Positions 2,057-61,120 are shown, counted from the first letter of the stretch. The stretch: DNA of 64,000 bases from Haliotis cracherodii (GCF_022045235.1 NW_027266273.1:25978001-26042000); one strand, 5' to 3'. Program-made: numbers and translations. Notes: generated by a model from the letters alone, not told the origin.

Positions 2057-2139
2057 GTCAATAGGTTGCTGCCTGGTGTGGGTTTAGACGGGTATGGAAG
2101 AAGAGCGGATGGATACGGGATACTTGGATAGATGAGAAG

Positions 2140-37967: not shown

Positions 37968-40900
37968 TTAATTGTCAGGCACATGTATTCTGTCATATAT
38001 CCTGTCAATAGGCCTCCTGTCATACTGTGGCAGCGTGGTGGTGTCATAATTGTTTTCTTCCTGGGGTCCAGATGCTGCGTTAGATGCAGACAGATGGCTG
38101 TACACGGCCGTGCTGTCTGACGGGACAACTTTACCTCCATTGCCCACTGCTCGACACAGAATGTCATATTCACCATCCTGCCTTTCACTCATGCCACTGT
38201 TTCCACCGTCAGCTTCTGTAGGACATACCAGCTGCACATCTGCCAGTTGCGGTTCTTCTACTTTAGCAGGATCCGAGTGCTGTCTGTGATACATAGCACT
38301 CTCAGTTCTCACTGCGTACTTGATTGGTTTCTTGTTGCTGAATACAGAAACAAACCTTCTCTTATAATATACAGAGCTGGGTAGATAGAGAGAATAGGAA
38401 TGACCTGATGGGGTGAGGATTTTGGGTGCATGAGATTTTTCAGATCGATACTCGCTGTTTTTAACATAAGTAATATGTCATTTGATTTGATTAATAAAGA
38501 AATCTCACCGTTTGATGATAAAACAGCCTGAGATTATGACCACAGCAGCAAGAGCCACTATCACACATACCACAGAAGCGATGATTGGAACTGAGAACAC
38601 AAATAAACATGCATGGTTATGTTCATGTGAAACTATTATTAAGCGTCAACCAACGTCTTTATGTAAAACAAGAATATGACTATATGAATAAATTTGCAAC
38701 ACCATATTTACTATTTTATTATTAAGTAATTTCATAGAAATGTAATATAGCATGAAATGTTTGTTCATAATCATTGATTAAATACTGTTGTCAGTAATTC
38801 ACACTACCTAAACTGTGATTACACGATGATAAAGCGCGCAATGTACCATTACACAGTTTTACAGTCATGTGGATTACCTTTTGTGTTTGATCCCAGGGTT
38901 GTGGTTTGAATCTGTGGTGTTGATGTAGTAGATCCTGTGTGAATACAACGTTCAAGTACAACTATATATACTGCCACCCATGTGCGTTACTATAGAAACA
39001 TGAACAAGGTCATGATACATGAAAGAGATTCAAGATTTATGGACATCAACTCTCAAATCTCTAAATAAGAGGTTCCTAGGCTACTTCTTGCGCCTTCATG
39101 AGGGGAAAGTGTGAGTAAGAGATTGGTTTAACGTCGCGTTGAACAGTAGTCCATTTATATCACGGTGTATAAGCTTCATGTCGGACGAAAGCCAGAAGCG
39201 ATGCAGGTCTAAGACCTTCACCATTTCGGTGTAACCCACGAGCGCATGTATGATGCTCACAAACATAGAAACATAATCGAGGCGAAACGAGATTCGAACC
39301 TACGATCATAGGTTTCTGGCGTGCCCAAGGGACGCAACTCTGCAGAGCGAATTGCGGCGCCTTAGACTAGGCCACCCGTGCCCCCACTAGGAGTGTGAAG
39401 GGCAAGAATATACCATCGATAGTTGTGTTTAAAGAATAAAAAAGGGGAAATATCTTTATCGTATGTCTCTATAGCTGTCCACGGCCGTGCAGCAACAAAT
39501 AGGTAGACTTGTACTTGTCAAGGATAAAATAGGTAAATGGTAATCCATGTTTACAAAAATATATTACTGATATATTCTTACATGCCTTGGAATAATTTAG
39601 CATTTACCCGACTGAAATACCGTTTCGCGAACATTGAGGCGTTATTGTGTATATAAATACAAAACACATATCGCTAAGTAATATTTGTTTCTGCCTATCA
39701 ATGTACATTTTACATAAAAGACATAACACCGGTTGGATATGGAGGAACTACAATTGTATACATGATATGTACCTTGCGTGGAAGCATCCGTGGTTTTATT
39801 TCGACAAGGTACGTACCAATCAGAACCTGTCAATGTAAGATACAAATTATGCAGAAAGCGCGAAAATCTGTTTTAAATACACATATCTTATTTCTCATAA
39901 ATAGTACCATAAACTTACATCAGAAGTGTTACCCATTTTACATAAGTAACTAGTCAAGTCGAGCTGTGTAACGTAACGCCAGCCGAAAAACATGTCAAGA
40001 TATCAATGTGTTAACCGTGCCTTTTGTCTCATCTTTCACATTTGACAAGATGCATATATCACTGATCGTGTCCAACCCTCTTAAACATGAGAGTTGATGA
40101 CAAGGTTATCCTCATCATATTTGAGCTTGGAGTATATTTATGCGAACACTTTGAGTCCATGGCAGACTGTTTACACAGAAGGGCACACCAATCGACTCAC
40201 TGCCATACGCCCTTGCCTGTATACTAGTATTTATGATGCCAATAGATACACTCTGGCATAGATACTTACTGGTACTTGTGTTCCATGTGCAGACATAATA
40301 GTTGGAGTCACTACAGTTGGCGACCTGGAATGACTCATTGAAAGCTGTCTGGCAGGTACCTGTTAGGTAAAGAATATTTTTCAGTGGATGTTCCTCCATT
40401 ATATATGTTTATAACAATTGGATGTTTTCAACAATAATTAATCATTGTCAGTTGAATGCCAATCAGTTTCGCGATTCTGTCTGTGTGGCAATCGAAATTG
40501 TAAAACTGTAGCTCATGTCACAAACTTGATGTGAGGGAGAGTAAGGTTCAGTAAAAGTAGTGACGGGTGATCAAGGTTCACAACATTACCATTTTTGTTT
40601 ATCCATATCTTGGTATGTTCAGCCTTAGCCTTCTTCAACACATTGCTGCCGATGGATGTAATTAAATCTTTTAAAGAGAATATCTCGGCGCCCTTGTTGA
40701 TGCAGTCTGTCGCCGCTGCCGACCAATTGAGAGCAGCACAGGAAGATTCAAACGTTAAGTTGTCTGAGGAAAAACAATTATGTAATTAGTTTGACATAAT
40801 TGCAGCTTAAAAAGTAGTTCATTGTTAACAAAATCTTAACAAATATAAACAAAAGTTACAAACAATATTTGTTGTCAATACAATTCTTTATCATGCATTT

Positions 40901-42525
40901 GGATATGATTATATACAAAATAAACTTCAACAGAAACTATGCTAAAAATCTACAAAACCGCTGTTAGAAGTGAAAGAATACACGCTGATCAAGTCACTAA
41001 AATAGCGTATTGCAAAACGAACAGTCTCGATTTACGAGTGAAATGAAAAAATACAGTTTATAAAGAAACATTTTCAAGAGAATGACAATAATAACAAAAG
41101 TTAAATATCACATTTGTGCGGTGAAATATAAAGTCCTATGTTCACTGCAATGAAAATATCGCTTTTCTGAACTTGAGAAAACACAGTCTTTCACACTGAA
41201 GTATATGATAAATATATTACACAAAGATTAGAATATGTGATAACAAAATCATATCAAAGGCTTAGTTAGATCCGCAATTCTTTGTGCATGATATATATTT
41301 TACAGGTGGTGTACGGTGTAATGTCCAGATGCAATATGCTCTCTAATAACTTTACAATAGGACAATAACACAATTTTTCACAACAGATAGTGAAAGTATT
41401 ACCCTTGTTGTAATTTGGACTTGTCGTCGTGTATTTTGTAGTCTTTGTTGAAGATCCTGTAATGTGAAATCGATTGTGCCTGTAACTACAATATATCACA
41501 CATATATATCATATATATATACATTTTAATTTGAAGCTTACATGATATACGGCTTTTCCATTAGATGAGAGGTCACGGGATCACCAAGGATCATATTCAA
41601 AACTATGTAATATCCTATATTGAAAAGTATGTGTTTATAAGAAGCAATGGATTCTGATTTGGATAAGGAATGCAAATCTGCACAGCGAGTTGTGACTCCA
41701 CTTGACCCCAAGTACATCATTATAGTGTAGCAGGGCGTGGAGTCATCCCACAGATGACATCCTTACCTTGTCAGCTTGCTGACGGGGTTAACCTCTTTGA
41801 TCATGTGGACAAGGCGTCCGACCTCTGATCAGAAGGTCCGTGGTTCGAATCCCATCACGGGACTCGGAAATTTTATGGCCGCTACAATAGCATGGGATCT
41901 TTTTAGTTACGTGAAATACATATTTTACCCTCATGATTAGAATATGTTTTGTTAAGTCATACCCATGGCTCAGTTAGTTTATTCACAGTTTCAGAGACTC
42001 ATACACTTTTCATTGCTATTTTGCCGTTCACGCACAATAGAATCTGTTTCGTCAGATAATCGAGACTGGTTATTCTCTGGCGTTGATGTTTTATATAATT
42101 AAGGGTCAACACACTTTTAAACTAACATGAGTAGCCATGCCTATAAATTGTAGAAAATGGCACTCGAATATGCGATAATTATTCTGATATATCGTGTTTG
42201 ACAGAACAATATATGTATACACACTGTCAGGCTCAATAATCATTTTCTTAGAACAGAGTGAATTATCGAAATCGAATGTAACTCCAATACAAATAATCCA
42301 CATCAAAGTACAAAATCTAAGTAGGAAACCTAATAAATACACCTGCACCCGCACCTCTACAAGTGCTCATTCATACACAAGACGGGACAACCCACAATAT
42401 GAAAACTGTTTCTCACCTGTGATAGTATTGCTGGTAGTACTGTGTGTGTGGCTCGGGTTCATCAGTATCAATACCATTAACACAAAGCTACCAGGTTTTA
42501 CAGGGGAGACGAACACAGAAGCCAT
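37968..42525 (-). CDS. Gene D1: type I CTLD receptor with a long multi-tyrosine tail, ~329 aa
   Basis: Exons 42525-42417 (MASVFVSPVKPGSFVLMVLILM..); 41456-41403 (T-rich); 40763-40590 (..LNWSAAATDCINKGAEIFSL..KIWIN); 40359-40270 (GTCQ..ANCSDSNYYVC); 39826-39773 (SDWYVPCRNKTT..); 38934-38878 (T-rich); 38590-38509 (TM VPIIASVVCVIVALAAVVIISGCFIIKR); 38337-37968 (tail with YDIL, YSHL, YDRI). 990 nt in frame; AATAAA on the minus strand at 37756-37761. Confidence 0.88.
39110..39386 (-). mobile_element. SINE family 2 copy
   Basis: Similarity to the 18800 copy. Confidence 0.85.
41726..41886 (+). mobile_element. 161-bp solo-LTR-like insertion with an internal tRNA-like cassette
   Basis: ATAG|TGTAGC...GCTACA|ATAG (TG..CA ends, 4-bp TSD). 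The empty ATAG site is present in the duplicate (~54159-54162). Internal B box GGTTCGAATCCC. Confidence 0.8.
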
Positions 42526-44355
42526 CCTTCATACGCGACGCTGTGTAAATACTGACACTCCACATTCACGTGTACCGTACAGATATTGTGACTCAGTTTC
42601 CTGCTTCGTTGCTAATACCAGTTCATGACTGGCTATGACAATAAACATTCCAGCTGATAGGGCAGGCTAGCTTAGAACAAGTGAAGAAAGGTCCCTTAGC
42701 TTAGAAAAGTCCCTTATCTATGAGGAAACAACATGTTCTCTTGTATTTGATAGCAAGCAGATAATTTATTCGAGGTAAATGTTGCAGTGTCAACTGTATA
42801 CATGTGTTCACATAATTTCATAGTATTATTGTTATACTAAACACATCATTAATATGTCAATATTTATGGTTGGATGATGTGTGCATACATTTGTCCGAAA
42901 ACATAAACGGATAATGCATTAATGCAATATTATACAACGCAGCTTAACATTCCGCACCAGTCACCTCAGAGTGAAGTTGTTTACTTTTATCGCTATTTTG
43001 TGTTTACGCCCAATGGCAAGCCATTCTGTTCTGCCTGTCGAGAATAGTTATTCTCTGGCGTTGATTATTTCCTATATATACATGAATGTGTATATGTCAT
43101 GATAAAACAGACTGGAATACGTTGAGGTTTGCTCTTTAAATAAATGAAATAAGAAAAATATCAAAATAATACATGCTAATGTTCACCATGTATTGGTTCT
43201 CAAACATGCCCTGACGCTCTCCTGTCTTGTCGGTTTGTTGGTAACTTGTCATCCATATGTGTCCCTATCAAGTTGCGATCTTTCCCAACTTAGTAACGTG
43301 GATTCATAACTGATTTCATTACAGATCGAGAGATATTTTTAAACCAAAATATCCCCTGCTTAGTGAACAATACTGACTAATGTATGCAGAAGGGTGACAA
43401 GAGTTACCTCCCCCTGGATCAGTAATCGGTGTGTTTATTATTACCATACAAATTGTGTCATATTTCACTGGATAAACTTCACGATTAAATGTTAGTCGAT
43501 CGTCGTTGAAAATACAGAAATGATAATGTCTTCTGGTTAATGTGTAACTCGAAGAGAATGCTAAGGCTCATATCCCACTCGCCATTTCACGGAAGTATCG
43601 TATTGTACCGAGGCACCCGTATACCGGCTTGACTGACCTGGTTCAGGGACAGTTCACTGAAAACGGGAGTGTGTATTGACGCATGAGCATCACCCCAGCT
43701 CTATAACACCGTTAGATGACATGTCACATCGTATGATCGCCACTTATTCCAACACAAATAGTTCAGTTCCCTCAATCAGCTTATAATTAGTGAAGGTCTT
43801 GATCAATTACCAATGTGAAGCCTAACTGACATAGACTATGGGTGGTTTTAGTCAATTAAATTCGAGGTCTAGTTGATAGTACATAAGTCCATAAGGTCGG
43901 TTGTTCGATGCCCTGGCTGAGTCCTACCGGGGGAGTTAAAAGTAGTTGTTATGGTAGCCTGGCGCTCTGCTTTGAGGTAGAAAACAAGGACTGGTCGACT
44001 CGTAATCTGTCGTGGTTGGGCATTCATGATATACTGCAGCATACCATCTCAGTGCAACCACAGACCAATCACCACCGACAGACAGCTGTCTAATCCGTAT
44101 CAAATCAAATTAATACACATTGCATTACTACATACGGAGAACGGAAGTTGTGCCACAGTATGTTTCAATATTTTACCTCTCTAACAAGAACATAAGGCTG
44201 AGGTGGATGAGTTACTTCCCTTAGGCGTGTAAGGATCGTATGGTGGGATATCCATACCCATAAAAACGCGACATAAGATGGTGGGAGTGGACGTGTTTGT
44301 GAATCGCTCTCACTGGAAGTGTTTCCTGGTCGAGATTTCAACCGTACACTGAGCA

Positions 44356-45898
44356 TTGCAAAACATCGACAAGAGAAATACAATCTGTCACAAAATGAGT
44401 GACAAAAAGATAAGAAAAGGACTTCGTCAAAATGACTCTTGTGATTCGAATATAGGGACATTCCTAAGAGTGCCACGTCGATACACAAAGGGAAGCTTAG
44501 TGCGTGAGTCTTTATATACTTTGTTCACACCTAACCCCCTGTACCAGAATATGACGTATACTGTTGAAGGACGATACAAACAATACATTCGTCTGCAGGC
44601 ACAGCAACTTAAACAGGATGCAACAGCATAGATAAGGGTAGAAAAGGACGAAAGTGACATCAAAGTCAACATTGCATATCTGGAACTGAAAGTCAATGCA
44701 ATAGATGAAAGATCGCTTTACTGCACTTAAAGCCAATGCTATCTATATCAGTGATAGTCCTGACGAGTGGGAAAATGACCAGAAAACAATAGAAGCGGAC
44801 GTACAATCCCTCAAACAACAAATGGGTGAATTGAAAAGCATTGACGAAGAAGATTTGGAACTGAGAGAGTCACTTATCGACCAAATAGCTCGCTCTATGA
44901 GAGACACAGTGTTACATTTACAAACATCAAAGAGCTAAGTGGAGTCGACGCGGATGGTGGAACTTGGGAAGAAACTGAAAATGTGCTCAGAAGGTCATTC
45001 AGGATGAACTTTAATTTGAAAGTGATAAAAGGCACTTTAAACGTAAATCGGGAAGAAAAACCAACCACCCCGTCGGGGTGAAGATCCGCGACCCCGCCCT
45101 GGCATCGCCACGTTTATGTTCACCCGTTAGAGGGACGCTGTCACATGTTGTGGGAAAGAGTTAAAAGGGAAACCATTCCATATTGTAGAACAGTTCCTAG
45201 AAGAGATAGTCGCCTGCAGGAGAGACGTCCTGATGCGTCCTGAAGGTCGGAAAGGCTAGGCGTTGGGGGGAAATGTCAACTCGGTTGTTGACAAACTTTT
45301 CATAAATAATGCTCTTCAAACAGCTGATATACCGCCCCCTCTCAGACCGACAACCAAAACGAGGCCATCAAAGGAAAGTACGGGTGGACAAGCGCGGGAA
45401 CAGCATGGTGTTGTAACACGAGATATCTGATTTAGTTAACATGGTCAGTGAGATACAACTACAAGTTTGAGCTACCGACAATAAACCGGATGTGTTTGAA
45501 TGTGCGGGTATTGTAATTGACGCTGTCGGAAGCCCACGTGTTTGTGTTTGGTCAGACCGTGCAAGCATAAGCAGACACAGTGTCCGAAATACAAATGCCT
45601 GCCCGTGGCCGGTAACTTTTCTGTCGGGCTGCCGGAAATTTTCGTCCTCCTGCCCGACTACCTGGCAGATACTTTTAAGACTTACGTATTCAGTTTTATC
45701 ATAACTCCCTGTTGACTCCCAAGTAATTGTTTGCATTATTTCAACTGAATCAAGATGCGATTTGCCCGGTAAAAAAAACCGAAATTTTTCACTAGTTATA
45801 ATATCTGAATGTGCGCAAGTAACTTTGAAGATGGGCAGGCCACATACCTGGGTCACCTGCCTGACTGTGGTACTGGATTTTAATATTTTTTCAAACAC
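44356..45898. pseudogene. Decayed retroelement-like coding remnants (coiled-coil ORF pieces on +, pol-like piece on -)
   Basis: Broken ORFs 44356-44938 (+; heptad-rich, with a stop and a frameshift) and 45368-45898 (-; ITIPAHSN..GLLSVA, loosely like the Gypsy post-protease region). Duplicated at 56616-58152. Identity uncertain. Confidence 0.3.
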
Positions 45899-47411
45899 TG
45901 AGCAGACAACGGAGAGTAGAAGAGTTGTGTATGCTGGATATAATAATGATATTCAGATGACTGCTCAGCAAATTGGAGAGGATATTTTAAGTACTAAGAT
46001 TTATACATTCTGAACTTATCTTCAGTAGTTTGTGAGGGATTAACAACTGACCACAGAGATATGAACACGTGTCACGTTGATATTAGGACTAAGTTATTAT
46101 AATCATGCATCCCTGAAATGAGTGTGTGTGATATGTTATCTCAATTTGATAAAATACGTTTTGCAAGACTGAGTTTTCCGATGCTAATAAGATCCATCTA
46201 CTTATGAAAATTCATGTGAAACATCAACTCATGATAACCCACTGTGCATGCTTAGTTTAGATGTTGGTGGTCTTAGAAGGCGCTCACAGTATCCTGATTT
46301 GCCAGACCATATATGGGTAGTGTGGTCAGGTCAAAAGTTAGTTTTGCTAGTAAATAATTATTGTGCGATATTGATCTTACTTACTCACCCCTGTTGTTAC
46401 CGAGCTGGACGTGTGGCTAGGGGATTATACTATATACCCCCTTTTCTAGTAATTCGTGAATTACCAATCTCACCGGGATTGCATTGTTTTAGGTCAAACA
46501 CCTTTCTATAGTTGTGAGTCAAGTTACTCTTTAGGTGAAGTACGTGTTGAATGTTGTGAGTCTAGATACTCTGTAGGTCCAGTTCCTGTATATTCAAGAA
46601 GTCCAGGATGTCCTTGCTCAGCCCAAACGACTTTAGACTGAGATTTTAATCAAGCATGTTCGTCTGATCTTAATTTTCCAAGAGGCATATTTTAGGGACA
46701 GGCTCTCCGTTACCATTTCACCCTTCCTTACCAAGACGAGATTACTCACTCCTTACTTAACGAGTAGGAGTAGCTGACTCTACCTACAGTGTGTAGCAGC
46801 TCATTAAGTAGTAGGTGAAGCCAGGCAGTCACACTGGTCACACCTAACTGATCTGTGTCATTATTGGGTCGTCTGACAAATGGGATGTCTGACAAGTGAA
46901 CCGATATTTGAGTTAATTTACTCCCAGGTGTTAATTGGATACAGCCGGTTTAATTGGCCGTCTATGCGGCTTTCTGGTCAGAGTGTTTGGTAATAGCTGT
47001 TACACAGTTGCTCAGCTACTCAGCTTGTATAGTTGCTCATGACTTAGATTAATTAGTGATCTTGGTCAGTGTCATTTGGGTCTTGAGCCTTTAGGTTTCA
47101 CTACCTGTTTTCGTGTACACATTTTGAAACTGATCGTCAGCGCTATCCTAAAAAGTACTATTATGTCAACCCTAAATATCATAAACTTCAAAAACTGTTT
47201 CTGCTCCTAAAGTCTCAGTGTTAAGAAACCTCGGCGGATTTGTCTCCTGTGTAGTTAAATGGTGTATAATATCATACGCATACTCATGCGAGTGTCCTCT
47301 GTTAATCAGATGACTTTCTTGCATTTACGTCCTTGTACCACTGTAAGTGGTTAGTTATGGAATAAACTATGTCGATGTCGATGTCGATGTCAATGCCTAT
47401 GTCTCTCTTTA

Positions 47412-47677
47412 GATGGTCCAGTCGTCAAAAGTGCCGCAATTTGCTGTGCAGAGTCGCGCCCCGTGGGAACGCCAGAAACTTATGATTGTGGTTTCGAATC
47501 CCGTTTCGCCCCGATTATGCTTTTAGGTTTGTCAACACCATACCCGTGCTCGTGGGTTTCACCGAAGTGGTAAAGGCCTGAGACCTGCATCACTTCGGGC
47601 TTTCCTCCCACATTAAGCTGCGATATAACTGGAATACTGTTAAAAGCGGCGTTAAACTCAGCTCACTCACTCACTCT
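47412..47677 (+). mobile_element. SINE family 2 copy (duplicate at ~59666-59930)
   Basis: GGTCCAGTCGTC..GTTTCGAATCCC..AAAAGCGGCGTTAAACTCAGCTCACTCACTC. Confidence 0.85.
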
Positions 47678-48563
47678 TTAGATACCTTTAGCTGATAAGA
47701 ATAAGACATTTACCACGTTCTCTATTATTGCTTTATTCTTATAGTGACACCCTGGTCTCAGGAGCACAGCTAAGTGACAATAATTTAGTGAGTAGAAACC
47801 CCAGGCCCATTGTTCACAATATTCTATGTTTGTATAGATGTATTATGAATTAACATGTCGAATACCCACACAAACAGGGTTAAACAAAGCTAACGAATTG
47901 ATTGCGAGAACAACAGTCACGTGTATTTGATAACCTAAACTCAGTCACAGTATTTGAATTAACGTCATTCGGAGCACAGTTTCGTTCCTTCGAACTGGCG
48001 AAAGAAAAACATTTCCCTGTATGACAACATGTTCTAATTAAATAACCTTTGAATCTCCACAGATATCGAACAAAGTTGAACATTAAACTGAAACAGGAAA
48101 TAATGACTAACAGTTTGGCCGGAATACATGACTACTAAATTACGTTTCGTTTTATATTTTAGATAACTCAACAATCAAATATTCATTTATTTTGTGTTAA
48201 TGTTACTTTCATCACTTGTGGAATTTACATGTTCTCATATATAGTCCTCAGTCATAGATACTGAGGACTGAGAAATAATTACAAAACAAATCACAACTAC
48301 TTTAAACTTAATATTTTATTGAATAGCGTTCAGAGCAAGATATTAAAGAAAAAAAAAGGATATGTAAACCTATAGAAACGTATCATGCATGTGTGTACCG
48401 GTGGAAAAGAATGAACACGGCTAGATCAAAGATTATCCGAAGAACAGTAGACACGAACTGTGCAGATCCTGCAATTGCATCCTAAGCTTGTGTGGGTATT
48501 GGCGATGGTCTCTGCAGAATTCATACCTTACAGTTCTGATTAGCAGTTTTAGGATTAGTGTAA

Positions 48564-48834
48564 TTAATCATTCTGTTCCGACTGGTTTGCTGGTGCCCTT
48601 TCGTTGTTTTCAGGTTCATTAAGTGCAGCATAATTGTTCATTTCTGAAGCATCTCGAGCGTGTAGGTGAGAGTAATAATCCACCTCCGGTCGTCCTTCAC
48701 TTGCGACATTCACCTGATTTCCTGATGACCCTATTTTCCTCCTGAAAATATAGTCAGTCCATCAATGGTCAAATGGATTTTCAATTGATGACGACAGACT
48801 AGATAGCGCGTGCGTTTATGTGTTATTGTGTGAG

Positions 48835-48866
<32 letters not shown>

Positions 48867-51800
48867 TGCATGCGTGCGTGCGTGCGTGTGTGTGTGTAAA
48901 TCGAATCTGGACCCGACAATCCAATGATTGATATTATGAGCAAAGGTCGGGGGACGATGAACAACTTTCAACAAACTCACCGAGCCTGACCAACCCAATC
49001 AATTAAGTCGCCTTTTTCAACAGCCACAGGTTGCTGGGTAACCGATCCTAACCTGGAATCCCCCACAGCGTGCTGGGTTAGCTGACTAATATTGTTCATT
49101 GGAGTGTGTCTAAGAGCAGGATATTTCTACCAGTCATCACTGACTTTCATATTAGTGTAATCACTAGTTTGCCCTTTACTCTTAATGGAAACTGTTTCGG
49201 TTGATAGTCTGGACTGATCATTCTCTGGCGTTGGCATTTTGAATTAAACTTTATATTGAATTCGTCTGACAGCGATCTTGCCACAATTGTAACACCCACT
49301 TACTAGGAAGAACAACTTGCACGAATCATCATCTTGTAAACAATACTAGTTACTGTTCCTACCTTTGGATTAAGTTACAGCCAAGAACAATGCTCACAGC
49401 AGCAAGAGCCGCTATCGTACATACGATCGAGGCGATGATTGGAACTGTGAGCAAAAATGAATATATATATCATTAAAGATAGCATGCATCGATTACATCT
49501 CGACGGAAAATATGTTGGTTTTTTTCAGGATCTGATTGGTATGGCAGTAGTTCTGTAAGTCCTCCCAATACAATGAAACTCTTCATTGGAGGCTTTCAAA
49601 TGTTCGATTTACCCTAATCAAGAATGGGAGTTAAGTCTGACGTAAGGCAAATTAAAATGCTGTGAAAACTGTTTTCAATCTACGAGTCCAAAATAAAATC
49701 TTTTCAACAGCATACATCATACATATTGTGCATTCACTCAACATATTCACATAATAAGCGCGGAATACATACGATGTCAAACGTGCAAATGTAAACACGT
49801 AGATTTATGTTTGTTACACCGAGTTGGTCATGCGTGGCATATGTGGTGAGCAACATACCATTTTAACATCCAAATCAATGCATAACTAAATCATGATAAT
49901 ACACACAATGACCAATCATACACCTTTACAGTCATAAATAATACCGTTTGTGTTTGCTCCAGGGCCTTTGGTTAGACTCGGTGGTGTAGATCCTGTGTGT
50001 ATTACAACGTACAAGTAAATATATACTAATATGCTGCCATATGCCCGTCCTGTCACATGTGCGTTTAATTATATTGGCAAAAATAGGGTCTTGACCGTCA
50101 TGAATAGGTTGCAGTACAAGGAGACGCAATGGCTGTGGGTATCAACGTCTGTAATCTCTACCCATGTATCTATGACGTTTCGATGCTACTTCTTGCCCCT
50201 TCTTCGGGTGGTATATATGTACTTGACCAGCAGAAAGTAGGTAATTTGTTATCCATGTTTGAGATGGATAAATTACTGATATATTCTTTCGCGACTTACG
50301 TTATTGAAAATTGTTTCACGAAAATTGAGGCGTAAATGTTCGTACGTCTGTTAATGTATATTTATCAAGACGGAACAAATTATCGCCTATTAATTTTCGT
50401 TACTGCCTATCAATGTAGATGTCACCACGGAGAGTGAGTCACTGAGTGGGATGGGTTTAACGCCGCTTTGAACAATATTCCAGCTGCATCAGGGCGACTC
50501 AGCTTCACGTGGGAGATAAGCACAAGTGACGCAGGTTTCAAAAGTTTACCACTTTGGTGTAACCCACGAGCACGGGGATGGTGCTGACAAACCTAAAAGG
50601 TAATCGTGGCGAACCGGAATTCGAACCCACAATCATTTGCGTCTGGCGTGCTCACGGGACGCAACAGCGAATTACGGCGTCTCAGACAAATGGGCCTACA
50701 GTGGTCCCGTTACGTAGAGGACAACACACAGGTCGATATTCTTGAGTGAGTATGGTTTTACGCCGCTTTTAGCAATATTCCAGCTACATTACGGTGGGGG
50801 ACACCAGAAATGGGCTTCACACGTTGTGCCCATGTCGAGAATCGAACCCGGGTCTTCGAAGAGACGAGCGAACGCTTTAACCACGAGGTTACTCGACCGC
50901 CCCTAGGTCGATATTAACAACTGTATACGTGATTGTAGGACTATTCCCTTGAAGGTTATATGTTCAAGTGAGATTATGACTATATGTCAGTGAATAAATT
51001 TGCTGCTCAATATTTACCATTTTATAAGTAAGTAATTTAAGTACTAAGTAAATAATGTTGAGAGTAATTCACACTACCTAAACTATGATTACACGATGAT
51101 AAAGCGCACAATGTACCATTACACAGTTTTACAGTAATGTGGATTACCTTTTGTGTTTGATCCCTGGGTTGTGGTTTGAATCTGTGGTGTTGATGTTGTA
51201 GATCCTGTGTGGATACAGATACAGATAGGTAGACGTAGACTTGTACTTGTCAAGGATAAAATAGGTAAATGGTAATCCATGTTTACAAAAATATATTACT
51301 GATATATTCTTACATGCCTTGGAATAATTTTAGCATTTACCCGATTGAAATACTGTTTCGCGAACAGTGAGGCGTTAATGTGTATATAAATGCAAAATAC
51401 ATATAGCTAAGTAATATTTGTTTCTGCCTATCAATGTACATTTTACATAAAAGACATAACACCGGATGGATATGGTGGAACTACAATTGTATACATGATA
51501 TGTACCTTGCGTGGAAGCATCCGTGGTTTCATTTCTTAAACATGAGAGTTGATGACAAGGTTATCCTCATCATATTTCAGCTTGGAGTATATTTATGCGA
51601 ACACTTTGAGTCCATGGCAGGCTGTTTACACAGAAGGGCACACTAATCGACTCACTGCCATACGCCCTTGCCTGTGTAGTAGTATTTATGATGTCAATTG
51701 ATACACTCTGGCATCGATACTTACTGGTACTTGTGTTCCATGTGCAGACATAATAGTTGGAGTCACTACAGTTGGCGACCTGGAATGACTCATTGACAGC

Positions 51801-54797
51801 TGTCTGGCAGGTACCTGTTAGGTTAAGAATATTATTCAGTGGATGTTCATCCATTATAATATATGTTTATAACAATTGGATGTTTTCAACAATAATTAAT
51901 CATTGTCAGTTGAATGCCAATCAGTTTCGCGATTCTGTCTGTGGGGCAATCAACATTGTAAAACTGTAGCTCATGTCACAAGCTTGATGTGAGGGAGAGT
52001 AAGGTTCAGTAAAAGTAGTGACGGGTGATCAAGGTTCACAACATTACCATTTATGTTTATCCATATCTTGGTGTGTTCAGCAGTAACATTCTTCAACACA
52101 TTGCTGCCGCGTGATGTTTTTACATCTTCTAAAGAGAATATCGCCGCGCCCTTGTTGATGCAGTCTGTCGCCGCTGCCGACCAATTGAGAGCAGCACAGG
52201 AAGATTCAAACGTGAAGTTGTCTGAGGAAAAACAATTATGTAATTAGTTTGACATAATTGCAGCTTAAAAAGTAGTTCATTGTTAACAAAATCTTAACAA
52301 ATATAAACAAAAGTTACAAACAATATTTGTTGTCAATACAATTCTTTATCATGCATTTGGATATGATTATATACAAAATAATCTTCAACAGAAACTATGC
52401 TAAAAATCTACAAAACCGCTGTTAGAAGTGAAAGAATACACGCTGATCAAGTCACTAAAATAGCGTATTGCAAAACGAACAATCTCGATTTACGAGTGAA
52501 ATGAAAAAATACAGTTTATAAAGAAACATTTTCAAGAGAATGACAAAAATAACAAAAGTTAAATATCACATTTGTGCGGTGAAATATAAAGTGCTATGTT
52601 CACTGCAATGAAAATATCGCTTTACTGAACTTGAGAAAACACAGTCTTTCCCACTGAAGTATATGATAAATATATTACACAAAGATTAGAATATGTGATA
52701 ACAAAATCATATCAAAGGCTTAGTTAGATCAGCAATTCTTTGTGCATGATATATATTTTACAGGTGGTGTACGGTGTAATGTCCAGATGCAATATGCACT
52801 CTAATAACTTTACAATAGGACAATAACTCAATTTTTCTCAACAGATAGTGAAAGTATTACCCTTGTTGTAATTTGGACTTGTCGTCGTGTATTTTGTAGT
52901 CTTTGTTGAAGATCCTGTAATGTGAAATCGATTGTGCCTGTAACTACAATATATCACACATATATATCCAATATATTTGTTTTAATTTGAGGTTTACATG
53001 ATATACGGCTTTTCAATTAGGTGGGAGGTCGGTCACATGACCGCGAAATTGACGTTCATAAGTGTATGGACAAAACCGTGTTTTTGAAATGACGGAAAAA
53101 CTGACGGACTGCTTCCACATTCCCAGGGAAGGCCCTGGGAATTTCCTAGCACGAATACATACAGAAGCATTCTCACTGATCATTTATACCTTTAATCTTG
53201 AACTCGGCGGTTTAGCATACATTAAGAAAGGTCAGATAGCTTGACTGCATGATCGTTCACTGTTAGCCTTGCTATGACCCATGCTAGTGAACAAAACGAA
53301 GAAATGCACATCCAAACTATCGTAGTATGGAACCAATCCTTGACCACGCTGACAGTGACGGTCCACAGCAATCTATGAAGTGAACTCAGTGTATATTTGG
53401 ATCATCTTTAATCGCCCTTCAATGATCGGCCAATTGATCACTGATGACTGAAACATGTAACCGCCACATGTTCATTAAGAACTTCCGAAATCGCTCCCAT
53501 CACGTGTATTGTGTCGGCGTACGACGCGCTGTCATTGTGACTGACTGACTTACTGAGGTAGTTCTTAACAGACCTTTCTTATCTAAAGTTGATATTATTT
53601 GAATACATGTGTTGTGTCAGATGTTTCTGAAGAGCAAGTTATGCATACATACGCTCATGTCACCTTTGTTTTGAGGAACCATTTTATTCTGCGATACAGT
53701 TGGTTGTTGTATGGCTGTCAGTGTAAACATTATGTCACACGTACTTAATAAAATTATGTTTAAATCCAGGCCTAGATCCTTGGAGGTAAACAAAATGTGA
53801 AAACCTTTTATAACAATTGACTTTCATTTAGTATTAACCTTCATTGAATGAGGGCCAAACATCCTTAATTTACTAAAGATATACAGTTTCCTTTAGTCTG
53901 CCACATGTAATGCCGCTAATGACAGAAGCTGCTCCTTTTCACAATTTTGCGCCATATTGACGACCGTCGTCGACGTTTTGACATTTTAAAAATAATAACG
54001 ACAATCACGGGAATAGTGCTGATGGACCAAGGATCATATTCAAAACAATGTAATATCCTATATTGTTTATAAGTAGCAATGGATTCTGATTTGGATAAGG
54101 AATGCAAATCTGCACAGCGAGTTGTGACTCCACTTGGCCCCCAGTACATCGAGCATTTATAGGATGGGATCTTTTTGGTTACGTGAAATACATATTTTAC
54201 CCTCATGATTAGAATATGTTTTGTTAAGTCATACCCATGGCTCAATTAGTTTATTCACAGTTTCAGAGACTCATACACTTTTCATTGCTATTTTGTCGTT
54301 CACGCACAATGGAATCTGTTTCGTCGGATAATCGAGACTGGTTATTCTCTGGCGTTAATGTTTTATATAATTAAGGGTCAACACGCTTTTAAACTAACAT
54401 GAGTAGCCATGCCTATAAATTGTAGAAAATGGCACTTGAATATGCGATAATTATTCTGATATATCGTGTTTGACAGAACAATACATGTATACACACTGTC
54501 AGGCTCAATAATCATTTTCTTAAAACAGAGTGAATTATCGAAATCGAACGTAACTCCAATACAAATAATCCACATCAAATTACAAAATCTAAGTAGGAAA
54601 CCTAATAAATACACCTGCACCCGCACCTCTACAAGTGCTCATTCATACACAAGACGGGACAACCAACAATATGAAAACTGTTTCTCACCTGTGATAGTAT
54701 TGCTGGTAGTGCTGTGTGTGTGGCTCGGGTTCATCAGTATCAATACCATTAACACAAAGCTACCAGGTTTTACAGGGGAGACGAACACAGAAGCCAT
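48564..54797 (-). CDS. Gene D2: type I CTLD receptor with an ITAM-like tail, ~263 aa
   Basis: Exons 54797-54689, 52914-52861, 52221-52048, 51814-51725, 51204-51148, 49992-49945, 49444-49363 (TM VPIIASIVCTIAALAAVSIVLGCNLIQR) and 48741-48564 (RKIGSSGNQVNVASEGRPEVDYYSHLHARDASEMNNYAALNEPENNERAPANQSEQND*). 792 nt in frame; AATAAA on the minus strand at 48315-48320. Confidence 0.85.
48890..49060 (-). mobile_element. SINE-like family 3, degenerate (duplicate at ~61145-61315)
   Basis: Partial match to family 3; adjacent (GT)n/(GCGT)n microsatellite. Confidence 0.6.
50430..50708 (-). mobile_element. SINE family 2, degenerate (duplicate at ~62685-62962)
   Basis: Similarity to the 18800 copy. Confidence 0.75.
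50744..50903 (-). mobile_element. SINE family 1 copy (duplicate at ~62998-63157)
   Basis: Reverse family 1 consensus. Confidence 0.85.
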
Positions 54798-57700
54798 CCT
54801 TCATACGCGACGCTGTGTAAATACTGACACTCCACACTCACGTGTATCGTACAGATATTGTGACTCAGTTTCCTGCTTCGTTGCTAATACCAGTTCATGA
54901 CTGGCTATGACAATAAACATTCCAGCTGATAGGGCAGGCTAGCTTAGAACAAGTGAAGAAAGGTCCCTTAGCTTAGAAAAGTCCCTTATCTATGAGGAAA
55001 CAACATGTTCTCTTGTATTTGATAGCAAGCATATAATTTATTCGAGGTAAATGTTGCAGTGTCAACTGTATACACTTTCATAGTATTATTGTTATACTAA
55101 ACACATCATTAATATGTCAATATTTATGGTTGGATGATGTGTGCATACATTTGTCCGAAAACATAAACGGATAATGCATTAATGCAATATTATACAACGC
55201 AGCTTAACATTCCGCACCAGTCACCTCAGAGTGAAGTTGTTTACTTTTATCGCTATTTTGTGTTTACGCCCAATGGCAAGCCATTCTGTTCTGCCTGTCG
55301 AGAATAGTTATTCTCTGGCGTTGATTATTTCCTATATATACATGAATGTGTATATGTCATGATAAAACAGACTGGATCACGTCGAGGTTTGCTCTTTAAA
55401 TAAATGAAATGAGAAAAAAATCAAAATAATACATGCTAATGTTCACCATGTATTGGTTCTCAAACATGCCCTGACGCCCTCCTGTTTTGTCGGTTTGTTG
55501 GTAACTTGTCATCCATATGTGTCCCTATTAAGTTGCGATCTTTCCCAACTTAGTAACGTGGATTCATAACTGATTTCATTACAGATCGAGAGATATTTTT
55601 AAACCAAAATATCCCCTGCTTAGTGAACAATACTGACTAAGGTATGCAGAAGGGTGACAAGAGTTACCTCCCCCTGGATCAGTAATCGGTGTGTTTATTA
55701 TTACCATACAAGTTGTGTCATATTTCACTGGCTAAACTTCACGATTAAATGTTAGTCGATCGTCGTTGAAAATACAGAAATGATAATGTCTTCTGGTTAA
55801 TGTGTAACTCGAAGAGAATGCTAAGGCTCATATCCCACTCGCCATTTCACGGAAGTATCGTATTGTACCGAGGCACCCGTATACCGGCTTGACTGACCTG
55901 GTTCAGGGACAGTTCACTGAAAACGTGAGTGTGTATTGACGCATGAGCATCACCCCAGCTCTATAACACCGTTAGATGACATGTCACATCGTATGATCGC
56001 CACTTATTCCAACACAAATAGTTCAGTTCCCTCAATCAGCTTATAATTAGTGAAGGTCTTGATCAATTACCAATGTGAAGCCTAACTGACATAGACTATG
56101 GGTGGTTTTAGTCAATTAAATTCGAGGTCTAGTTGATAGTACATAAGTCCATAAGGTCGGTTGTTCGATGCCCTGGCTGAGTCCTACCGGGGGAGTTAAA
56201 AGTAGTTGTTATGGTAGCCTGGCGCTCTGCTTTGAGGTAGAAAACAAGGACTGGTCGACTCGTAATCTGTCGTGGTTGGGCATTCATGATATACTGCAGC
56301 ATACCATCTCAGTGCAACCACAGACCAATCACCACCGACAGACAGCTGTCTAATCCGTATCAAATCAAATTAATACACATTGCATTACTACATACGGAGA
56401 ACGGAAGTTGTGCCACAGTATGTTTCAATATTTTACCTCTCTAACAAGAACATAAGGCTGAGGTGGATGAGTTACTTCCCTTAGGCGTGTAAGGATCGTA
56501 TGGTGGGATATCCATACCCATAAAAACGCGACATAAGATGGTGGGAGTGGACGTGTTTGTGAATCGCTCTCACTGGAAGTGTTTCCTGGTCGAGATTTCA
56601 ACCGTACACTGAGCATTGCAAAACATCGACAAGAGAAATACAATCTGTCACAAAATGAGTGACAAAAAGATAAGAAAAGGACTTCGTCAAAATGACTCTT
56701 GTGATTCGAATATAGGGACATTCCTAAGAGTGCCACGTCGATACACAAAGGGAAGCTTAGTGCGTGAGTCTTTATATACTTTGTTCACACCTAACCCCCT
56801 GTACCAGAATATGACGTATACTGTTGAAGGACGATACAAACAATACATTCGTCTGCAGGCACAGCAACTTAAACAGGATGCAACAGCATAGATAAGGGTA
56901 GAAAAGGACGAAAGTGACATCAAAGTCAACATTGCATATCTGGAACTGAAAGTCAATGCAATAGATGAAAGATCGCTTTACTGCACTTAAAGCCAATGCT
57001 ATCTATATCAGTGATAGTCCTGACGAGTGGGAAAATGACCAGAAAACAATAGAAGCGGACGTACAATCCCTCAAACAACAAATGGGTGAATTGAAAAGCA
57101 TTGACGAAGAAGATTTGGAACTGAGAGAGTCACTTATCGACCAAATAGCTCGCTCTATGAGAGACACAGTGTTACAAACATCAAAGAGCTAAGTGGAGTC
57201 GACGCGGATGGTGGAACTTGGGAAGAAACTGAAAATGTGCTCAGAAGGTCATTCAGGATGAACTTGAATTTGAAAGTGATAAAAGGCACTTTAAACGTAA
57301 ATCGGGAAGAAAAACCAACCACCCCGTCGGGGTGAAGATCCGCGACCCCGCCCTGGCATCGCCACGTTTATGTTCACCCGTTAGAGGGACGCTGTCACAT
57401 GTTGTGGGAAAGAGTTAAAAGGGAAACCATTCCATATTGTAGAACAGTTCCTAGAAGAGATAGTCGCCTGCAGGAGAGACGTCCTGATGCGTCCTGAAGG
57501 TCGGAAAGGCTAGGCGTTGGGGGGAAATGTCAACTCGGTTGTTGACAAACTTTTCATAAATAATGCTCTTCAAACAGCTGATATACCGCCCCCTCTCAGA
57601 CCGACAACCAAAACGAGGCCATCAAAGGAAAGTACGGGTGGACAAGCGCGGGAACAGCATGGTGTCGTAACACGAGATATCTGATTTAGTTAACATGGTC

Positions 57701-60700
57701 AGTGAGATACAACTACAAGTTTGAGCTACCGACAATAAACCGGATGTGTTTGAATGTGCGGGTATTGTAATTGACGCTGTCGGAAGCCCACGTGTTTGTG
57801 TTTGGTCAGACCGTGCAAGCATAAGCAGACACAGTGTCCGAAATACAAATGCCTGCCCGTGGCCGGTAACTTTTCTGTCGGGCTGCCGGAAATTTTCGTC
57901 CTCCTGCCCGACTACCTGGCAGATACTTTTAAGACTTACGTATTCAGTTTTATCATAACTCCCTGTTGACTCCCAAGTAATTGTTTGCATTATTTCAACT
58001 GAATCAAGATGCGATTTGCCCGGTAAAAAAAACCGAAATTTTTCACTAGTTATAATATCTGAATGTGCGCAAGTAACTTTGAAGATGGGCAGGCCACATA
58101 CCTGGGTCACCTGCCTGACTGTGGTACTGGATTTTAATATTTTTTCAAACACTGAGCAGACAACGGAGAGTAGAAGAGTTGTGTATGCTGGATATAATAA
58201 TGATATTCAGATGACTGCTCAGCAAATTGGAGAGGATATTTTAAGTACTAAGATTTATACATTCTGAACTTATCTTCAGTAGTTTGTGAGGGATTAACAA
58301 CTGACCACAGAGATATGAACACGTGTCACGTTGATATTAGGACTAAGTTATTATAATCATGCATCCCTGAAATGAGTGTGTGTGATATGTTATCTCAATT
58401 TGATAAAATACGTTTTGCAAGACTGAGTTTTCCGATGCTAATAAGATCCATCTACTTATGAAAATTCATGTGAAACATCAACTCATGATAACCCACTGTG
58501 CATGCTTAGTTTAGATGTTGGTGGTCTTAGAAGGCGCTCACAGTATCCTGATTTGCCAGACCATATATGGGTAGTGTGGTCAGGTCAAAAGTTAGTTTTG
58601 CTAGTAAATAATTATTGTGCGATATTGATCTTACTTACTCACCCCTGTTGTTACCGAGCTGGACGTGTGGCTAGGGGATTATACTATATACCCCCTTTTC
58701 TAGTAATTCGTGAATTACCAATCTCACCGGGATTGCATTGTTTTAGGTCAAACACCTTTCTATAGTTGTGAGTCAAGTTACTCTTTAGGTGAAGTACGTG
58801 TTGAATGTTGTGAGTCTAGATACTCTGTAGGTCCAGTTCCTGTATATTCAAGAAGTCCAGGATGTCCTTGCTCAGCCCAAACGACTTTAGACTGAGATTT
58901 TAATCAAGCATGTTCGTCTGATCTTAATTTTCCAAGAGGCATATTTTAGGGACAGGCTCTCCGTTACCATTTCACCCTTCCTTACCAAGACGAGATTACT
59001 CACTCCTTACTTAACGAGTAGGAGTAGCTGACTCTACCTACAGTGTGTAGCAGCTCATTAAGTAGTAGGTGAAGCCAGGCAGTTACACTGGTCACACCTA
59101 ACTGATCTGTGTGATTATTGGGTCGTCTGACAAATGGGATGTCTGACAAGTGAACCGATATTTGAGTTAATTTACTCCCAGGTGTAAATTGGATACAGCC
59201 GGTTTAATTGGCCTTCTATGCGGCTTTCTGGTCAGAGTGTTTGGTAATAGCTGTTACACAGTTGCTCAGCTAATCAGCTTGTATAGTTGCTCATGACTTA
59301 GATTAATTAGTGATCTTGGTCAGTGTCATTTGGGTCTTGAGCCTTTAGGTTTCACTACCTGTTTTCGTGTACACATTTTGAAACTGATCGTCAGCGCTAT
59401 CCTAAAAAGTACTATTATGTCAACCCTAAATATCATAAACTTCAAAAACTGTTTCTGCTCCTAAAGTCTCAGTGTTAAGAAACCTCGGCGGATTTGTCTC
59501 CTGTGTAGTTAAATGGTGTATAATATCATACGCATACTCATGCGAGTGTCCTCTGTTAATCAGATGACTTTCTTGCATTTACGTCCTTGTACCACTGTAA
59601 GTGGTTAGTTATGGAATAAACTATGTCGATGTCGATGTCGATGTCAATGCCTATGTCTCTCTTTAGATGGTCCAGTCGTCAAAAGTGCCGCAATTTGCTG
59701 TGCAGAGTCGCGCCCCGTGGGAACGCCAGAAACTTATGATTGTGGTTTCGAATCCCGTTTCGCCCCGATTATGCTTTTAGGTTTGTCAACACCATACCCG
59801 TGCTCGTGGGTTTCACCGAAGTGGTAAAGGCCTGAGACCTGCATCACTTCGGGCTTTCCTCCCACATTAAGGTGCGATATAACTGGAATACTGTTAAAAG
59901 CGGCGTTAAACTCAGCTCACTCACTCACTCTTTAGATACCTTTAGCTGATAAGAATAAGACATTTACCACGTTCTCTATTATTGCTTTATTCTTATAGTG
60001 ACACCCTGGTCTCAGGAGCACAGCTAAGTGACAATAATTTAGTGAGTAGAAACCCCAGGCCCATTGTTCACAATATTCTATGTTTGTATAGATGTATTAT
60101 GAATTAACATGTCGAATACCCACACAAACAGGGTTAAACAAAGCTAACGAATTGATTGCGAGAACAACAGTCACGTGTATTTGATAACCTAAACTCAGTC
60201 ACAGTATTTGAATTAACGTCATTCGGAGCACAGTTTCGTTCCTTCGAACTGGCGAAAGAAAAACATTTCCCTGTATGACAACATGTTCTAATTAAATAAC
60301 CTTTGAATCTCCACAGATATCGAACAAAGTTGAACATTAAACTGAAACAGGAAAAAATGACTAACAGTTTGGCCGGAATACATGACTACTAAATTACATT
60401 TCGTTTTATATTTTAGATAACTCAACAATCAAATATTCATTTATTTTGTGTTAATGTTACTTTCATCACTTGTGGAATTTACATGTTCTCATATATAGTC
60501 CTCAGTCATAGATACTGAGGACTGAGAAATAATTACAAAACAAATCACAACTACTTTAAACTTAATATTTTATTGAATAGCGTTCAGAGCAAGATATTAA
60601 AGAAAAAAAAAGGATATGTAAACCTATAGAAACGTATCATGCATGTGTGTACCGGTGGAAAAGAATGAACGCGGCTAGATCAAAGATTATCCGAAGAACA

Positions 60701-60817
60701 GTAGACACGAACTGTGCAGATCCTGCAATTGCATCCTGAGCTTGTGTGGGTATTGGCGATGGTCTCTGCAGAATTCATACCTTACAGTTCTGATTAGCAG
60801 TTTTAGGATTAGTGTAA

Positions 60818-61088: not shown

Positions 61089-61120
<32 letters not shown>

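What the first reader, a model, noticed from the sequence alone, without database searches (positions are those of the whole stretch)
40590..40763. CTLD exon is far more diverged than its flanking intron, mostly by replacement changes
Seen (hand count): D1 40590-40763 versus D2 52048-52221 differ at 16/174 nt (~9%), giving 10 amino-acid changes and 3 synonymous codons. The changes cluster in GAEIFSLKDLITSIGSNVLKKAKAE versus GAAIFSLEDVKTSRGSNVLKNVTAE, include charge changes and create a new NVT sequon. The adjacent 639-nt intron differs at only ~10 sites (~1.6%). Inference: diversifying selection on a ligand-binding surface, or patch conversion from another paralog.
Basis: partly seen in the sequence, partly recalled or inferred. 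Interest (0 to 1): 0.8.

Follow-up and report, generated by a model that had tools for sequence, protein, structure and literature searches.

The report
Divergent patch in abalone lectin-like receptor
Two tandem copies of an uncharacterised black-abalone receptor gene are almost identical except for a 93-base patch in one exon, and that patch looks like older variation that escaped the copy-correction which homogenised everything around it, not like proven adaptive change.

Summary
D1 (40590-40763) and D2 (52048-52221) differ at 16/174 nt, giving 10 replacement and 3 synonymous codons. The adjacent intron differs at 10/639. The exon is the most diverged 174-nt window of the 11-kb D1/D2 alignment (permutation p 7.5e-4).

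"Mostly replacement" is no evidence of selection. 75% replacement matches the random expectation of 79%, and dN/dS is 0.80. Synonymous sites are raised too.

The window is Haliotis cracherodii. The exon encodes the N-terminal half of a compact, NK-receptor-like C-type lectin-like domain, in a type I membrane protein family found only in Haliotis.

- A third copy, D3, shares D2's patch. D4 (83% identical) shares D1's.
- No donor exists in this assembly.
- Both states at five of the ten sites, including the N-x-T sequon, recur in H. rufescens paralogs (the sequon also in H. rubra) in conflicting combinations.
- Another individual carries a mosaic exon.
- D1 and D3 are identical in the next exon, where D1 differs at 7/30 residues from its H. 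rufescens ortholog.

Best reading: concerted evolution with short-tract conversion, leaving an old variable patch on the α2 face. That face is not the canonical ligand surface. Positive selection is possible but unproven.

The parts
40590..40763 (-). D1 CTLD exon 1 (174 nt, intron phase 1 at both ends). It encodes residues 55-112 of the annotated product P0009 (β1, α1, β1', short helix, α2, β2).
   Evidence: Translation; exact match to P0009; spliced contig; secondary structure.
40595..40687 (-). The divergent tract: 15 of the 16 D1/D2 differences fall in 93 nt (codons 25-56). The first 69 nt of the exon (read 5' to 3' on the minus strand, 40688-40756) carry one difference.
40652..40665 (-). 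Core block: 6 changes in 14 nt (L33V, I34K, S36 synonymous, I37R). It behaves as one unit, being absent as a whole from a D2-like contig of another individual (X5).
52048..52221 (-). D2 CTLD exon 1, the partner in the comparison. It is expressed and spliced in run X23.
40270..40359 (-). D1 CTLD exon 2 (90 nt; β3-β5 and three of the four conserved Cys). It has one D2-specific replacement (F>V at 40342) and is identical in protein between D1 and D3.
51725..51814 (-). D2 CTLD exon 2.
40764..41402 (-). 40797-41088 is a high-copy interspersed repeat, about 80% identical to many loci genome-wide.
41403..41456 (-). Ser/Thr-rich exon upstream of the CTLD (GSSTKTTKYTTTSPNYNK).
   Evidence: Sequence; P0009.
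40079..51535 (.). D1 repeat unit of the tandem array. Against D2 it is 3.4% diverged over 40079-41574 and 0.5% over 41887-51535.
51534..63789 (.). D2 repeat unit. D3 follows just beyond the window; its exon lies at G000:C10:26042580-26042753.

Best explanation
The exon belongs to a tandem array of Haliotis-specific type I membrane receptors. Each has a signal peptide, a Ser/Thr stretch, an 88-residue compact C-type lectin-like domain without the long loop, a stalk, a TM segment, and either a long tyrosine-rich tail (D1) or an ITAM-like tail (D2, D3). In H. cracherodii the 5' halves of the copies have been homogenised by gene conversion or unequal crossing-over (concerted evolution). This leaves strata of 0.5%, 1.6% and about 3% divergence. 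The 93-nt tract in CTLD exon 1 is an island that was not homogenised, or was re-imported. It carries older variants of a hypervariable patch that predate the split from H. rufescens, and short conversion tracts shuffle those variants among paralogs and alleles. The patch lies on the short helix, loop and α2 helix face. It redistributes positive charge and adds or removes an N-glycan at residue 44. Shown here: the excess divergence, the strata, the sharing of states across species, the mosaics, the fold and the location on it. Inferred: that selection for functional difference between the copies (changed lateral or dimer contacts, or an unconventional binding face) keeps the island from being erased.
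For: 1. Strata. D1/D2 divergence is 0.5% over 9.6 kb and 3.4% over 40079-41574. Within the latter the intron is 1.6%, the exon 9.2% and the other flank about 3%.
2. Concerted evolution. D1 and D3 are identical in CTLD exon 2 (0/30 residues), while D1 differs from its H. rufescens ortholog P0008 (same long tail, same X1/X2 isoform pair) at 7/30. D1-D3 share A17 where all H. rufescens copies and D4 have V.
3. Old variants. Both states at sites 26, 31, 37, 44 and 46 occur in H. rufescens paralogs, and the N-A-T sequon also occurs in H. rubra. The combinations violate the four-gamete rule (26 versus 44, 37 versus 44) within 54 nt.
4. Mosaics in other animals. The X5 contig has D2 states at 40595-40630 and 40671-40687 but D1 states at 40652-40665. 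All neighbouring variable sites are less than 31 nt apart, so a k=31 assembly cannot have spliced the pure types together. The X6 contig mixes D2- and D3-specific states. The contig of organism B shows a further combination, with codon 37 reading AG-.
5. Synonymous sites in the exon are raised as well (dS 0.118 against intron 0.016-0.031; P 0.012-0.06), and the N:S ratio is as for random change.
6. The model and fold search place the patch on the α2 side of a CTLD.
Against: - No donor for the D2/D3 patch exists in this assembly. Only four copies of the exon are found, and no other locus matches the 57-nt patch with 3 or fewer mismatches.
- Polarised with D4, all 12 changes shared by D2 and D3 are derived on the D2/D3 stem, whereas the three polarisable intron changes are D1-derived (Fisher p 0.002). 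A plain remnant of old divergence would be expected to show changes on both branches. This asymmetry fits a burst on one lineage, by selection or by import.
- Sharing across species is seen at the protein level only. DNA of the other species could not be fetched, so parallel replacement is not excluded for single-step changes.
- The synonymous excess rests on 3-4 changes.
Confidence: 0.55

Rival explanations
1. Positive (diversifying or neofunctionalising) selection alone. After a recent D1 versus D2/D3 duplication, replacement changes were driven to fixation on the D2/D3 stem in a functional surface patch, without any conversion.
For: Replacement divergence exceeds the local non-coding rate (12 changes in 134.5 sites versus 25/1060, p 4e-4). 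All 12 shared changes sit on the D2/D3 stem when polarised by D4. Three codons took two hits. The same positions (30, 31, 34) also differ between the D4 orthologs of the two species, and site 37 shows I, R and L among the copies and paralogs, with a further AG- codon (Ser or Arg) in the organism B contig. Between the orthologs D1 and P0008, the CTLD changes three times faster than the rest of the protein (18/88 versus 16/205, p 0.0045).
Against: dN/dS is 0.80 and the replacement share equals the neutral expectation. Synonymous sites are raised too. One synonymous change is contiguous with two replacement changes (CAT>ACG), which points to a block event. The N-x-T and other states are shared with other species in conflicting combinations, so they are not new. 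The intron is not a valid neutral yardstick if the flanks were homogenised, and point 2 of the main reading indicates they were.
Confidence: 0.2
2. Relaxed constraint plus clustered mutation. The α2 segment tolerates change, and one or a few multi-nucleotide mutation events (error-prone repair or template switching) produced the cluster by chance, with no adaptive or conversion history.
For: dN/dS is near 1 in every pairwise comparison of the exon (0.67-1.18). There are three tandem multi-base changes (TT>AA, CAT>ACG, AG>CT). The 6-in-14-nt block is present or absent as a unit. D2 carries a change at the otherwise invariant A45, has lost part of a stalk exon, and was not among the annotated proteins retrieved.
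Against: The rate is 3-6 times the local non-coding rate, which relaxed constraint alone cannot give. The core residues of the domain are invariant across the family down to 31-38% overall identity (F, S, S, C, W, A, C, F, G, A, H, C, C, C), so the domain is constrained. D3 shares the patch and is an intact annotated gene. No local direct or inverted template for the derived k-mers was found. Sharing across species is not explained.
Confidence: 0.15
3. Assembly artefact. D1 and D2 are alleles or mis-joined haplotypes, and the differences are allelic or erroneous.
For: The pure D1-type exon (E26, K31, KAK, K56) was not seen in the contigs of two other individuals, X5 and X6. Most of the two units are 99.5% identical.
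Against: The window has no gaps. D1, D2 and D3 have different flanks: a 276-bp segment present before D1 and D3 but not D2, a 1.1-kb indel, and different 3' gene halves. The D2 type is found as spliced RNA and in two other individuals. D1-type states occur in H. rufescens P0011 and in organism B. Contigs show presence, not absence.
Confidence: 0.03

Closest known systems
Vertebrate NK-cell C-type lectin-like receptors (NKR-P1/Clr, CD69, LLT1, Ly49; KLR genes of the NK gene complex)
   Same: They are the best structural matches of the modelled domain: Foldseek E about 1e-4, probability 1.0, TM 0.5-0.62 on the target. Like them, the domain has no Ca2+/sugar-site motifs. The genes lie in tandem clusters, and copies share an ectodomain but carry different signalling tails. 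That such families evolve rapidly as mosaics through conversion and selection is from general knowledge, not tested here.
   Different: The orientation is type I (signal peptide, C-terminal TM) instead of type II. The domain has only 88 residues and lacks the long loop region. Pfam Lectin_C is below threshold. There is no sequence-level relationship, and the family is confined to Haliotis. The variable patch lies on the α2 side, which in LLT1-type receptors is the dimer face, not the ligand face (PMC9418145).
Concerted evolution with islands of divergence in tandem gene families (for example abalone VERL repeats, primate KIR and MHC class I genes, RHD/RHCE); cited from general knowledge and not checked in papers here
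   Same: Paralogs within a species are more alike than orthologs between species. Short segments escape homogenisation. Patchwork sharing of motifs occurs among paralogs.
   Different: Here the island is only about 93 nt. The donor and recipient relations are unresolved, and selection has not been demonstrated.
Canonical Ca2+-dependent C-type lectins (DC-SIGN, mannose-binding protein; Pfam PF00059)
   Same: Same fold class (DC-SIGN and L-SIGN are among the top hits). The four-Cys pattern and the W-I-x motif after α2 are conserved.
   Different: The EPN/QPD and WND motifs and the whole long loop are missing, so sugar binding through the canonical site is not expected.

Membership tests
C-type lectin-like domain (CTLD) superfamily | CTLD fold: β1, α1, α2, then a β-sheet with β5 pairing back to β1 | tested here: met
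   AlphaFold2 model of P0009 (the D1 product), with residues 55-141 at pLDDT 80-90 and element order β1 57-61, α1 68-77, α2 93-104, then four strands. The best-ranked Foldseek PDB hits listed are all CTLDs (NKR-P1A/B, L-SIGN, CD69, LLT1, CLEC5A, LOX-1) at E 1e-4 to 1e-3.
C-type lectin-like domain (CTLD) superfamily | Four conserved cysteines (α1 to β5, and β3 to the loop after β4) | tested here: met
   C75, C115, C128 and C136 of P0009 are invariant in the 12-protein alignment. The pairing itself is inferred, not shown.
Pfam Lectin_C (PF00059) | Score at or above the gathering threshold (22.6 bits) | tested here: not met
   14.8-17.5 bits, matching only profile positions 2-48 of 107, for single exons and for full-length family members. 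D1 itself gives no hit. A profile search against PDB sequences gives only weak CTLD hits, E 0.017-0.96.
Ca2+-dependent carbohydrate-recognition domains | Long loop region with EPN/QPD and WND motifs | tested here: not met
   The domain has 88 residues. β2 (KIWIN) is followed directly by β3, and no such motifs appear in alignment A3.
   NG86 for D1 versus D2: dN 0.095, dS 0.118, omega 0.80. All pairs among D1-D4 fall in 0.67-1.18. Site models need more coding DNA, which could not be fetched.
   The residues map to positions 81, 86, 88, 89, 92, 99-101 and 111, that is β1', the short helix, the loop, α2 and the end of β2. In NKR-P1 the ligand face is L0/L3/L5/L6/β3/β4. Helix periodicity puts 99 and 101 on the exposed side and the invariant A100 on the buried side (inference).
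   Only D1-D4 match the exon in the 1.18-Gb assembly. The 57-nt D2 patch occurs only in D2 and D3, allowing up to 3 mismatches. Shared 9-mers with eight more distant paralog loci are at chance level.
   The X5 mosaic contig; the X6 contig mixing D2 and D3 states; four-gamete violations among patch haplotypes of two species.
   3-4 synonymous differences against 0.6-1.1 expected (P 0.003-0.11, depending on the yardstick and the count).

The most novel reading that the evidence does not exclude
The α2-face patch, including the glycan on/off switch at residue 44 and the relocated positive charges, is a balanced module that persists across species. Micro-conversion moves it between receptors with ITAM-like and long tyrosine-rich tails. 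On this reading abalone have an independently evolved, type I, compact-CTLD counterpart of vertebrate paired NK receptors, and its recognition or pairing specificity is diversified combinatorially in the germline.
Probability: 0.2. Interest if true: 0.7.

Novelty: new member of a known kind. Interest (0 to 1): 0.42.

Why it matters
The case shows how an exon that is far more diverged than its intron can mislead. In a tandem array under concerted evolution the intron is not a neutral clock, so an excess of mostly replacement change does not demonstrate selection.

The locus also exposes an unstudied gene family restricted to Haliotis. Only a handful of proteins match it among 1.84 billion cluster representatives, and all those with a source name are called "uncharacterized". 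The family combines an NK-receptor-like lectin fold with alternative signalling tails and a small hypervariable patch.

If the patch variants prove to be maintained by selection, the family would be a tractable invertebrate model for germline diversification of paired immune-type receptors. It would also be a candidate locus for disease-resistance studies in abalone.

Tried and rejected
- **Donor search.** I ran a DNA search with both exon versions, a pattern search for the 57-nt D2 patch allowing 3 mismatches, and a protein search that found eight more distant paralog loci on C10 and C5. None of them carries the D2/D3 states.
- **Template-switch or quasi-palindrome origin of the core block.** D2-specific 8-mers do not recur near the exon on either strand beyond chance. 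The small GATGT....ACATC stem created by L33V explains one change at most. I rejected this as a general cause.
- **Word-index protein search with the 57-residue exon.** It returned no candidates, because the tool only sees proteins of 31-100 residues for that query. The exhaustive search found the family.
- **DNA of other species.** There is therefore no codon-level or intron-level comparison between species.
- I stopped that step and only ran the number-only Fisher tests. The script held two short exon translations copied from earlier outputs.
- **Spliced models.** Exons were searched singly, and full-length analysis used the annotated proteins returned by the search tools.
- **Read evidence.** The organism B contig (X10) matches none of the four H. 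rufescens proteins, so I did not equate organism B with that species.
- **Literature.** Searches found no paper on this family.

Full report
**1. Observation**

On the minus strand, 40590-40763 (D1) and 52048-52221 (D2) differ at 16 of 174 nt. That gives ten replacement codons (L2F, E26A, K31E, L33V, I34K, I37R, K44N, A45V, K46T, K56I) and three synonymous codons. The 639-nt intron 40764-41402 has 10 substitutions.

The contrast is beyond chance:
- Exon 16/174 versus local non-coding 25/1060, Fisher p 5e-5.
- The exon is the maximum among all 174-nt windows of the 11,125 aligned columns of the two repeat units, local permutation p 7.5e-4.
- 14 changes lie in 73 nt, which 0 of 20,000 permutations reached.

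Fifteen of the sixteen differences lie in 40595-40687. The remaining 9.6 kb of the unit is only 0.5% diverged.

**2. What the locus is**

- D1 is annotated as XP_071103263/265. P0009 (311 aa) contains the exon's peptide exactly.
- D3 is XP_071103266 (P0012).
- D4 is XP_071103267.

The protein has a signal peptide, a Ser/Thr stretch, an 88-residue domain encoded by 40590-40763 plus 40270-40359, a stalk and a TM segment. The tail is either long with four Tyr motifs (D1) or short with YSHL-x10-YAAL (D3; the same tail lies at 48621-48674 for D2).

A spliced contig in run X23 joins 40359|40590 and is of the D2 type, with 16 differences from D1 plus the D2-specific 40342C. So the exon borders are right and D2 is transcribed.

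On the domain's identity:
- Pfam Lectin_C is below threshold, both for single exons and for full-length members.
- An AlphaFold2 model of P0009 has the domain at pLDDT 80-90.
- Its best PDB neighbours are all C-type lectin-like domains, led by NKR-P1A/B, L-SIGN, CD69 and LLT1.
- It is a compact CTLD without the long loop and without Ca2+/sugar motifs.

An exhaustive search of 1.84 billion cluster representatives found seven hits, one of them a spurious repetitive protein. All named relatives are Haliotis "uncharacterized protein" entries. I found no paper on the family.

**3. Other copies and polarity**

The assembly holds four copies of the exon: D1, D2, D3 (just past the window's end) and D4 (21 kb further on, 83% identical).
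- D3 shares 12 of D2's 16 states.
- D4 shares D1's state at all 12 of those sites.
- D2 alone has L2F and A45V.
- Codons 25 and 26 differ in every copy: GCC GAG, GCG GCG, GCA GTG and GCC GCG.

No other locus carries the D2/D3 patch. A pattern search allowing 3 or fewer mismatches finds only D2 and D3. Eight more distant paralog loci share only chance-level 9-mers with it. No local template was found either.

**4. Why "mostly replacement" is not evidence of selection**

The exon has 134.5 non-synonymous and 36.5 synonymous sites. Random change would therefore be 79% replacement, and the observed value is 12/16 (binomial p 0.76). The NG86 estimates are dN 0.095, dS 0.118 and omega 0.80. All pairs among D1-D4 give omega between 0.67 and 1.18.

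The unusual feature is the total rate. Synonymous changes (3-4) also exceed what the intron rate predicts (0.6-1.1; P 0.003-0.11). One synonymous change is contiguous with two replacement changes (CAT>ACG). Replacement divergence does exceed the non-coding rate (p 4e-4). That argues for selection only if the intron shares the exon's genealogy.

**5. The flanks do not share the exon's genealogy**

Divergence between the units comes in strata: 0.5%, 1.6%, 9% and about 3%. Genes with the long tail and with the ITAM-like tail both exist in H. rufescens, and H. rubra has both tails as annotated isoforms. The D1 versus D2/D3 split is therefore older than these species.

Yet D1 and D3 are identical in CTLD exon 2 (0/30 residues), while D1 differs from its ortholog P0008 at 7/30. 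D1-D3 also share A17 where every H. rufescens copy and D4 have V. Paralogs that are more alike within a species than orthologs are between species is the signature of concerted evolution. The patch is the segment that escaped it.

**6. Mosaics**

At sites 26, 31, 37, 44 and 46, both the D1 and the D2 states occur among H. rufescens paralogs. N-A-T also occurs in H. rubra, so the sequon is old. The combinations conflict:

| Copy | Site 26 | Site 37 | Site 44 |
|---|---|---|---|
| D1 | E | I | K |
| D2 | A | R | N |
| P0008 | E | I | N |
| P0011 | A | R | K |

These are four-gamete violations within 54 nt.

In another H. cracherodii individual (X5), a contig with D2-type intron and exon ends has the D1 state across 40652-40665. 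All adjacent variable sites are closer than 31 nt, so the k=31 assembly cannot have created this from the pure types. The X6 contig mixes D2- and D3-specific states. The contig of organism B carries yet another combination, with codon 37 reading AG-. The D4 orthologs of the two species differ at sites 30, 31, 34 and 40, again K/E at 31 and I/R at 34.

**7. Location on the fold**

The replacements map as follows:
- β1': residue 81.
- Short helix: residues 86, 88 and 89.
- Following loop: residue 92.
- α2: residues 99-101.
- End of β2: residue 111.
- β1: residue 57.

In NKR-P1 the ligand face is made of L0/L3/L5/L6 and β3/β4, and α2 is the dimer face of LLT1-type receptors (PMC9418145). The region that would correspond to the ligand face, encoded by exon 2, is the homogenised part in D1-D3. 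In the sequence, D1 carries Lys at 31, 44, 46 and 56. D2 and D3 instead have Lys34, Arg37 and an N-x-T sequon at residue 44.

**8. Explanation and rivals**

Most likely (0.55): concerted evolution of the array, with short-tract conversion shuffling an old hypervariable patch. The patch may be kept different between copies by selection, but that last step is an inference.

Against this reading, no donor is present in the assembly. Also, all 12 shared changes polarise to the D2/D3 stem, while the three polarisable intron changes are D1-derived (p 0.002). That asymmetry would also fit a burst of selection or an import from a copy missing from this haplotype.

| Rival | Confidence |
|---|---|
| Selection alone | 0.20 |
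| Relaxed constraint with clustered mutation | 0.15 |
| Assembly artefact | 0.03 |

Between the orthologs D1 and P0008 the CTLD changes three times faster than the rest of the protein (18/88 versus 16/205, p 0.0045). This is compatible with selection or with conversion.

**9. Comparison and novelty**

The pattern is the familiar one of tandem immune-type receptor families: a new member of a known kind. What is less ordinary is the family itself, a type I, compact, Haliotis-restricted CTLD receptor with alternative tails. Membership in Pfam Lectin_C fails, but membership in the CTLD fold class is met.

**10. Limits**

- Only one reads call was available, and it laid assembled contigs, which show presence, not absence.
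- The pure D1-type exon was not seen in X5 or X6. This is unexplained.

Noticed in passing
window 51480-51536, compared with 39760-39803 and 63746-63790: D2 has lost the acceptor and the first part of the stalk exon that encodes SDWYVPC, including the stalk cysteine. A 276-bp segment present ahead of the D1 and D3 units (39803-40078, 63790-64065) is missing at the D1/D2 unit junction. No D2 product was found among the annotated proteins, although D2-type spliced RNA exists.
   Followed up: partly
L031/L038 (window-equivalent 65034-71950, beyond the window end): The D3 unit contains three tandem copies of a roughly 2.1-kb segment homologous to 52748-54868 of D2 (95% identity). The array is therefore structurally unstable upstream of D3's CTLD exons.
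   Followed up: no
window 40797-41088 (and to about 41213): The yardstick intron holds a high-copy interspersed repeat. It is about 80% identical to at least 37 scored loci on many contigs (1464 first-look candidates), and contig depth there runs into the thousands.
   Followed up: partly
proteins P0010 and P0004 (H. rubra LOC124257045 isoforms X2 and X7): One annotated gene gives isoforms that share the signal peptide and CTLD exon 1 but then use different CTLD exon 2, stalk, TM and tail (long versus ITAM-like). This suggests splicing across tandem units, so one ectodomain exon may be paired with either tail.
   Followed up: no
G000:C10:26073277-26145527 and G000:C5:19446240-19476604 (L047-L054): Eight more distant paralogous exons (25-54% identity) lie in two clusters, one directly downstream of this array on C10 and one on C5. 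Some belong to two-domain genes like P0003 and P0014.
   Followed up: partly
window 40685-40689 (codons 25-26): All four copies differ here (GCC GAG, GCG GCG, GCA GTG, GCC GCG). Two sites, two bases apart, each show three states, in a CpG-rich context.
   Followed up: no
window 40590-40763 in runs X5 and X6: The reference D1 haplotype of the exon (E26, K31, K44, K46, K56) was not seen in the contigs of two other individuals of the same species label. D1 may be polymorphic for the patch, or the contigs may have collapsed the copies.
   Followed up: no
window 1-2056, 2124-3199, 25781-27170: Three long minisatellite arrays with units about 80-86% alike show up in the self-comparison.
   Followed up: no
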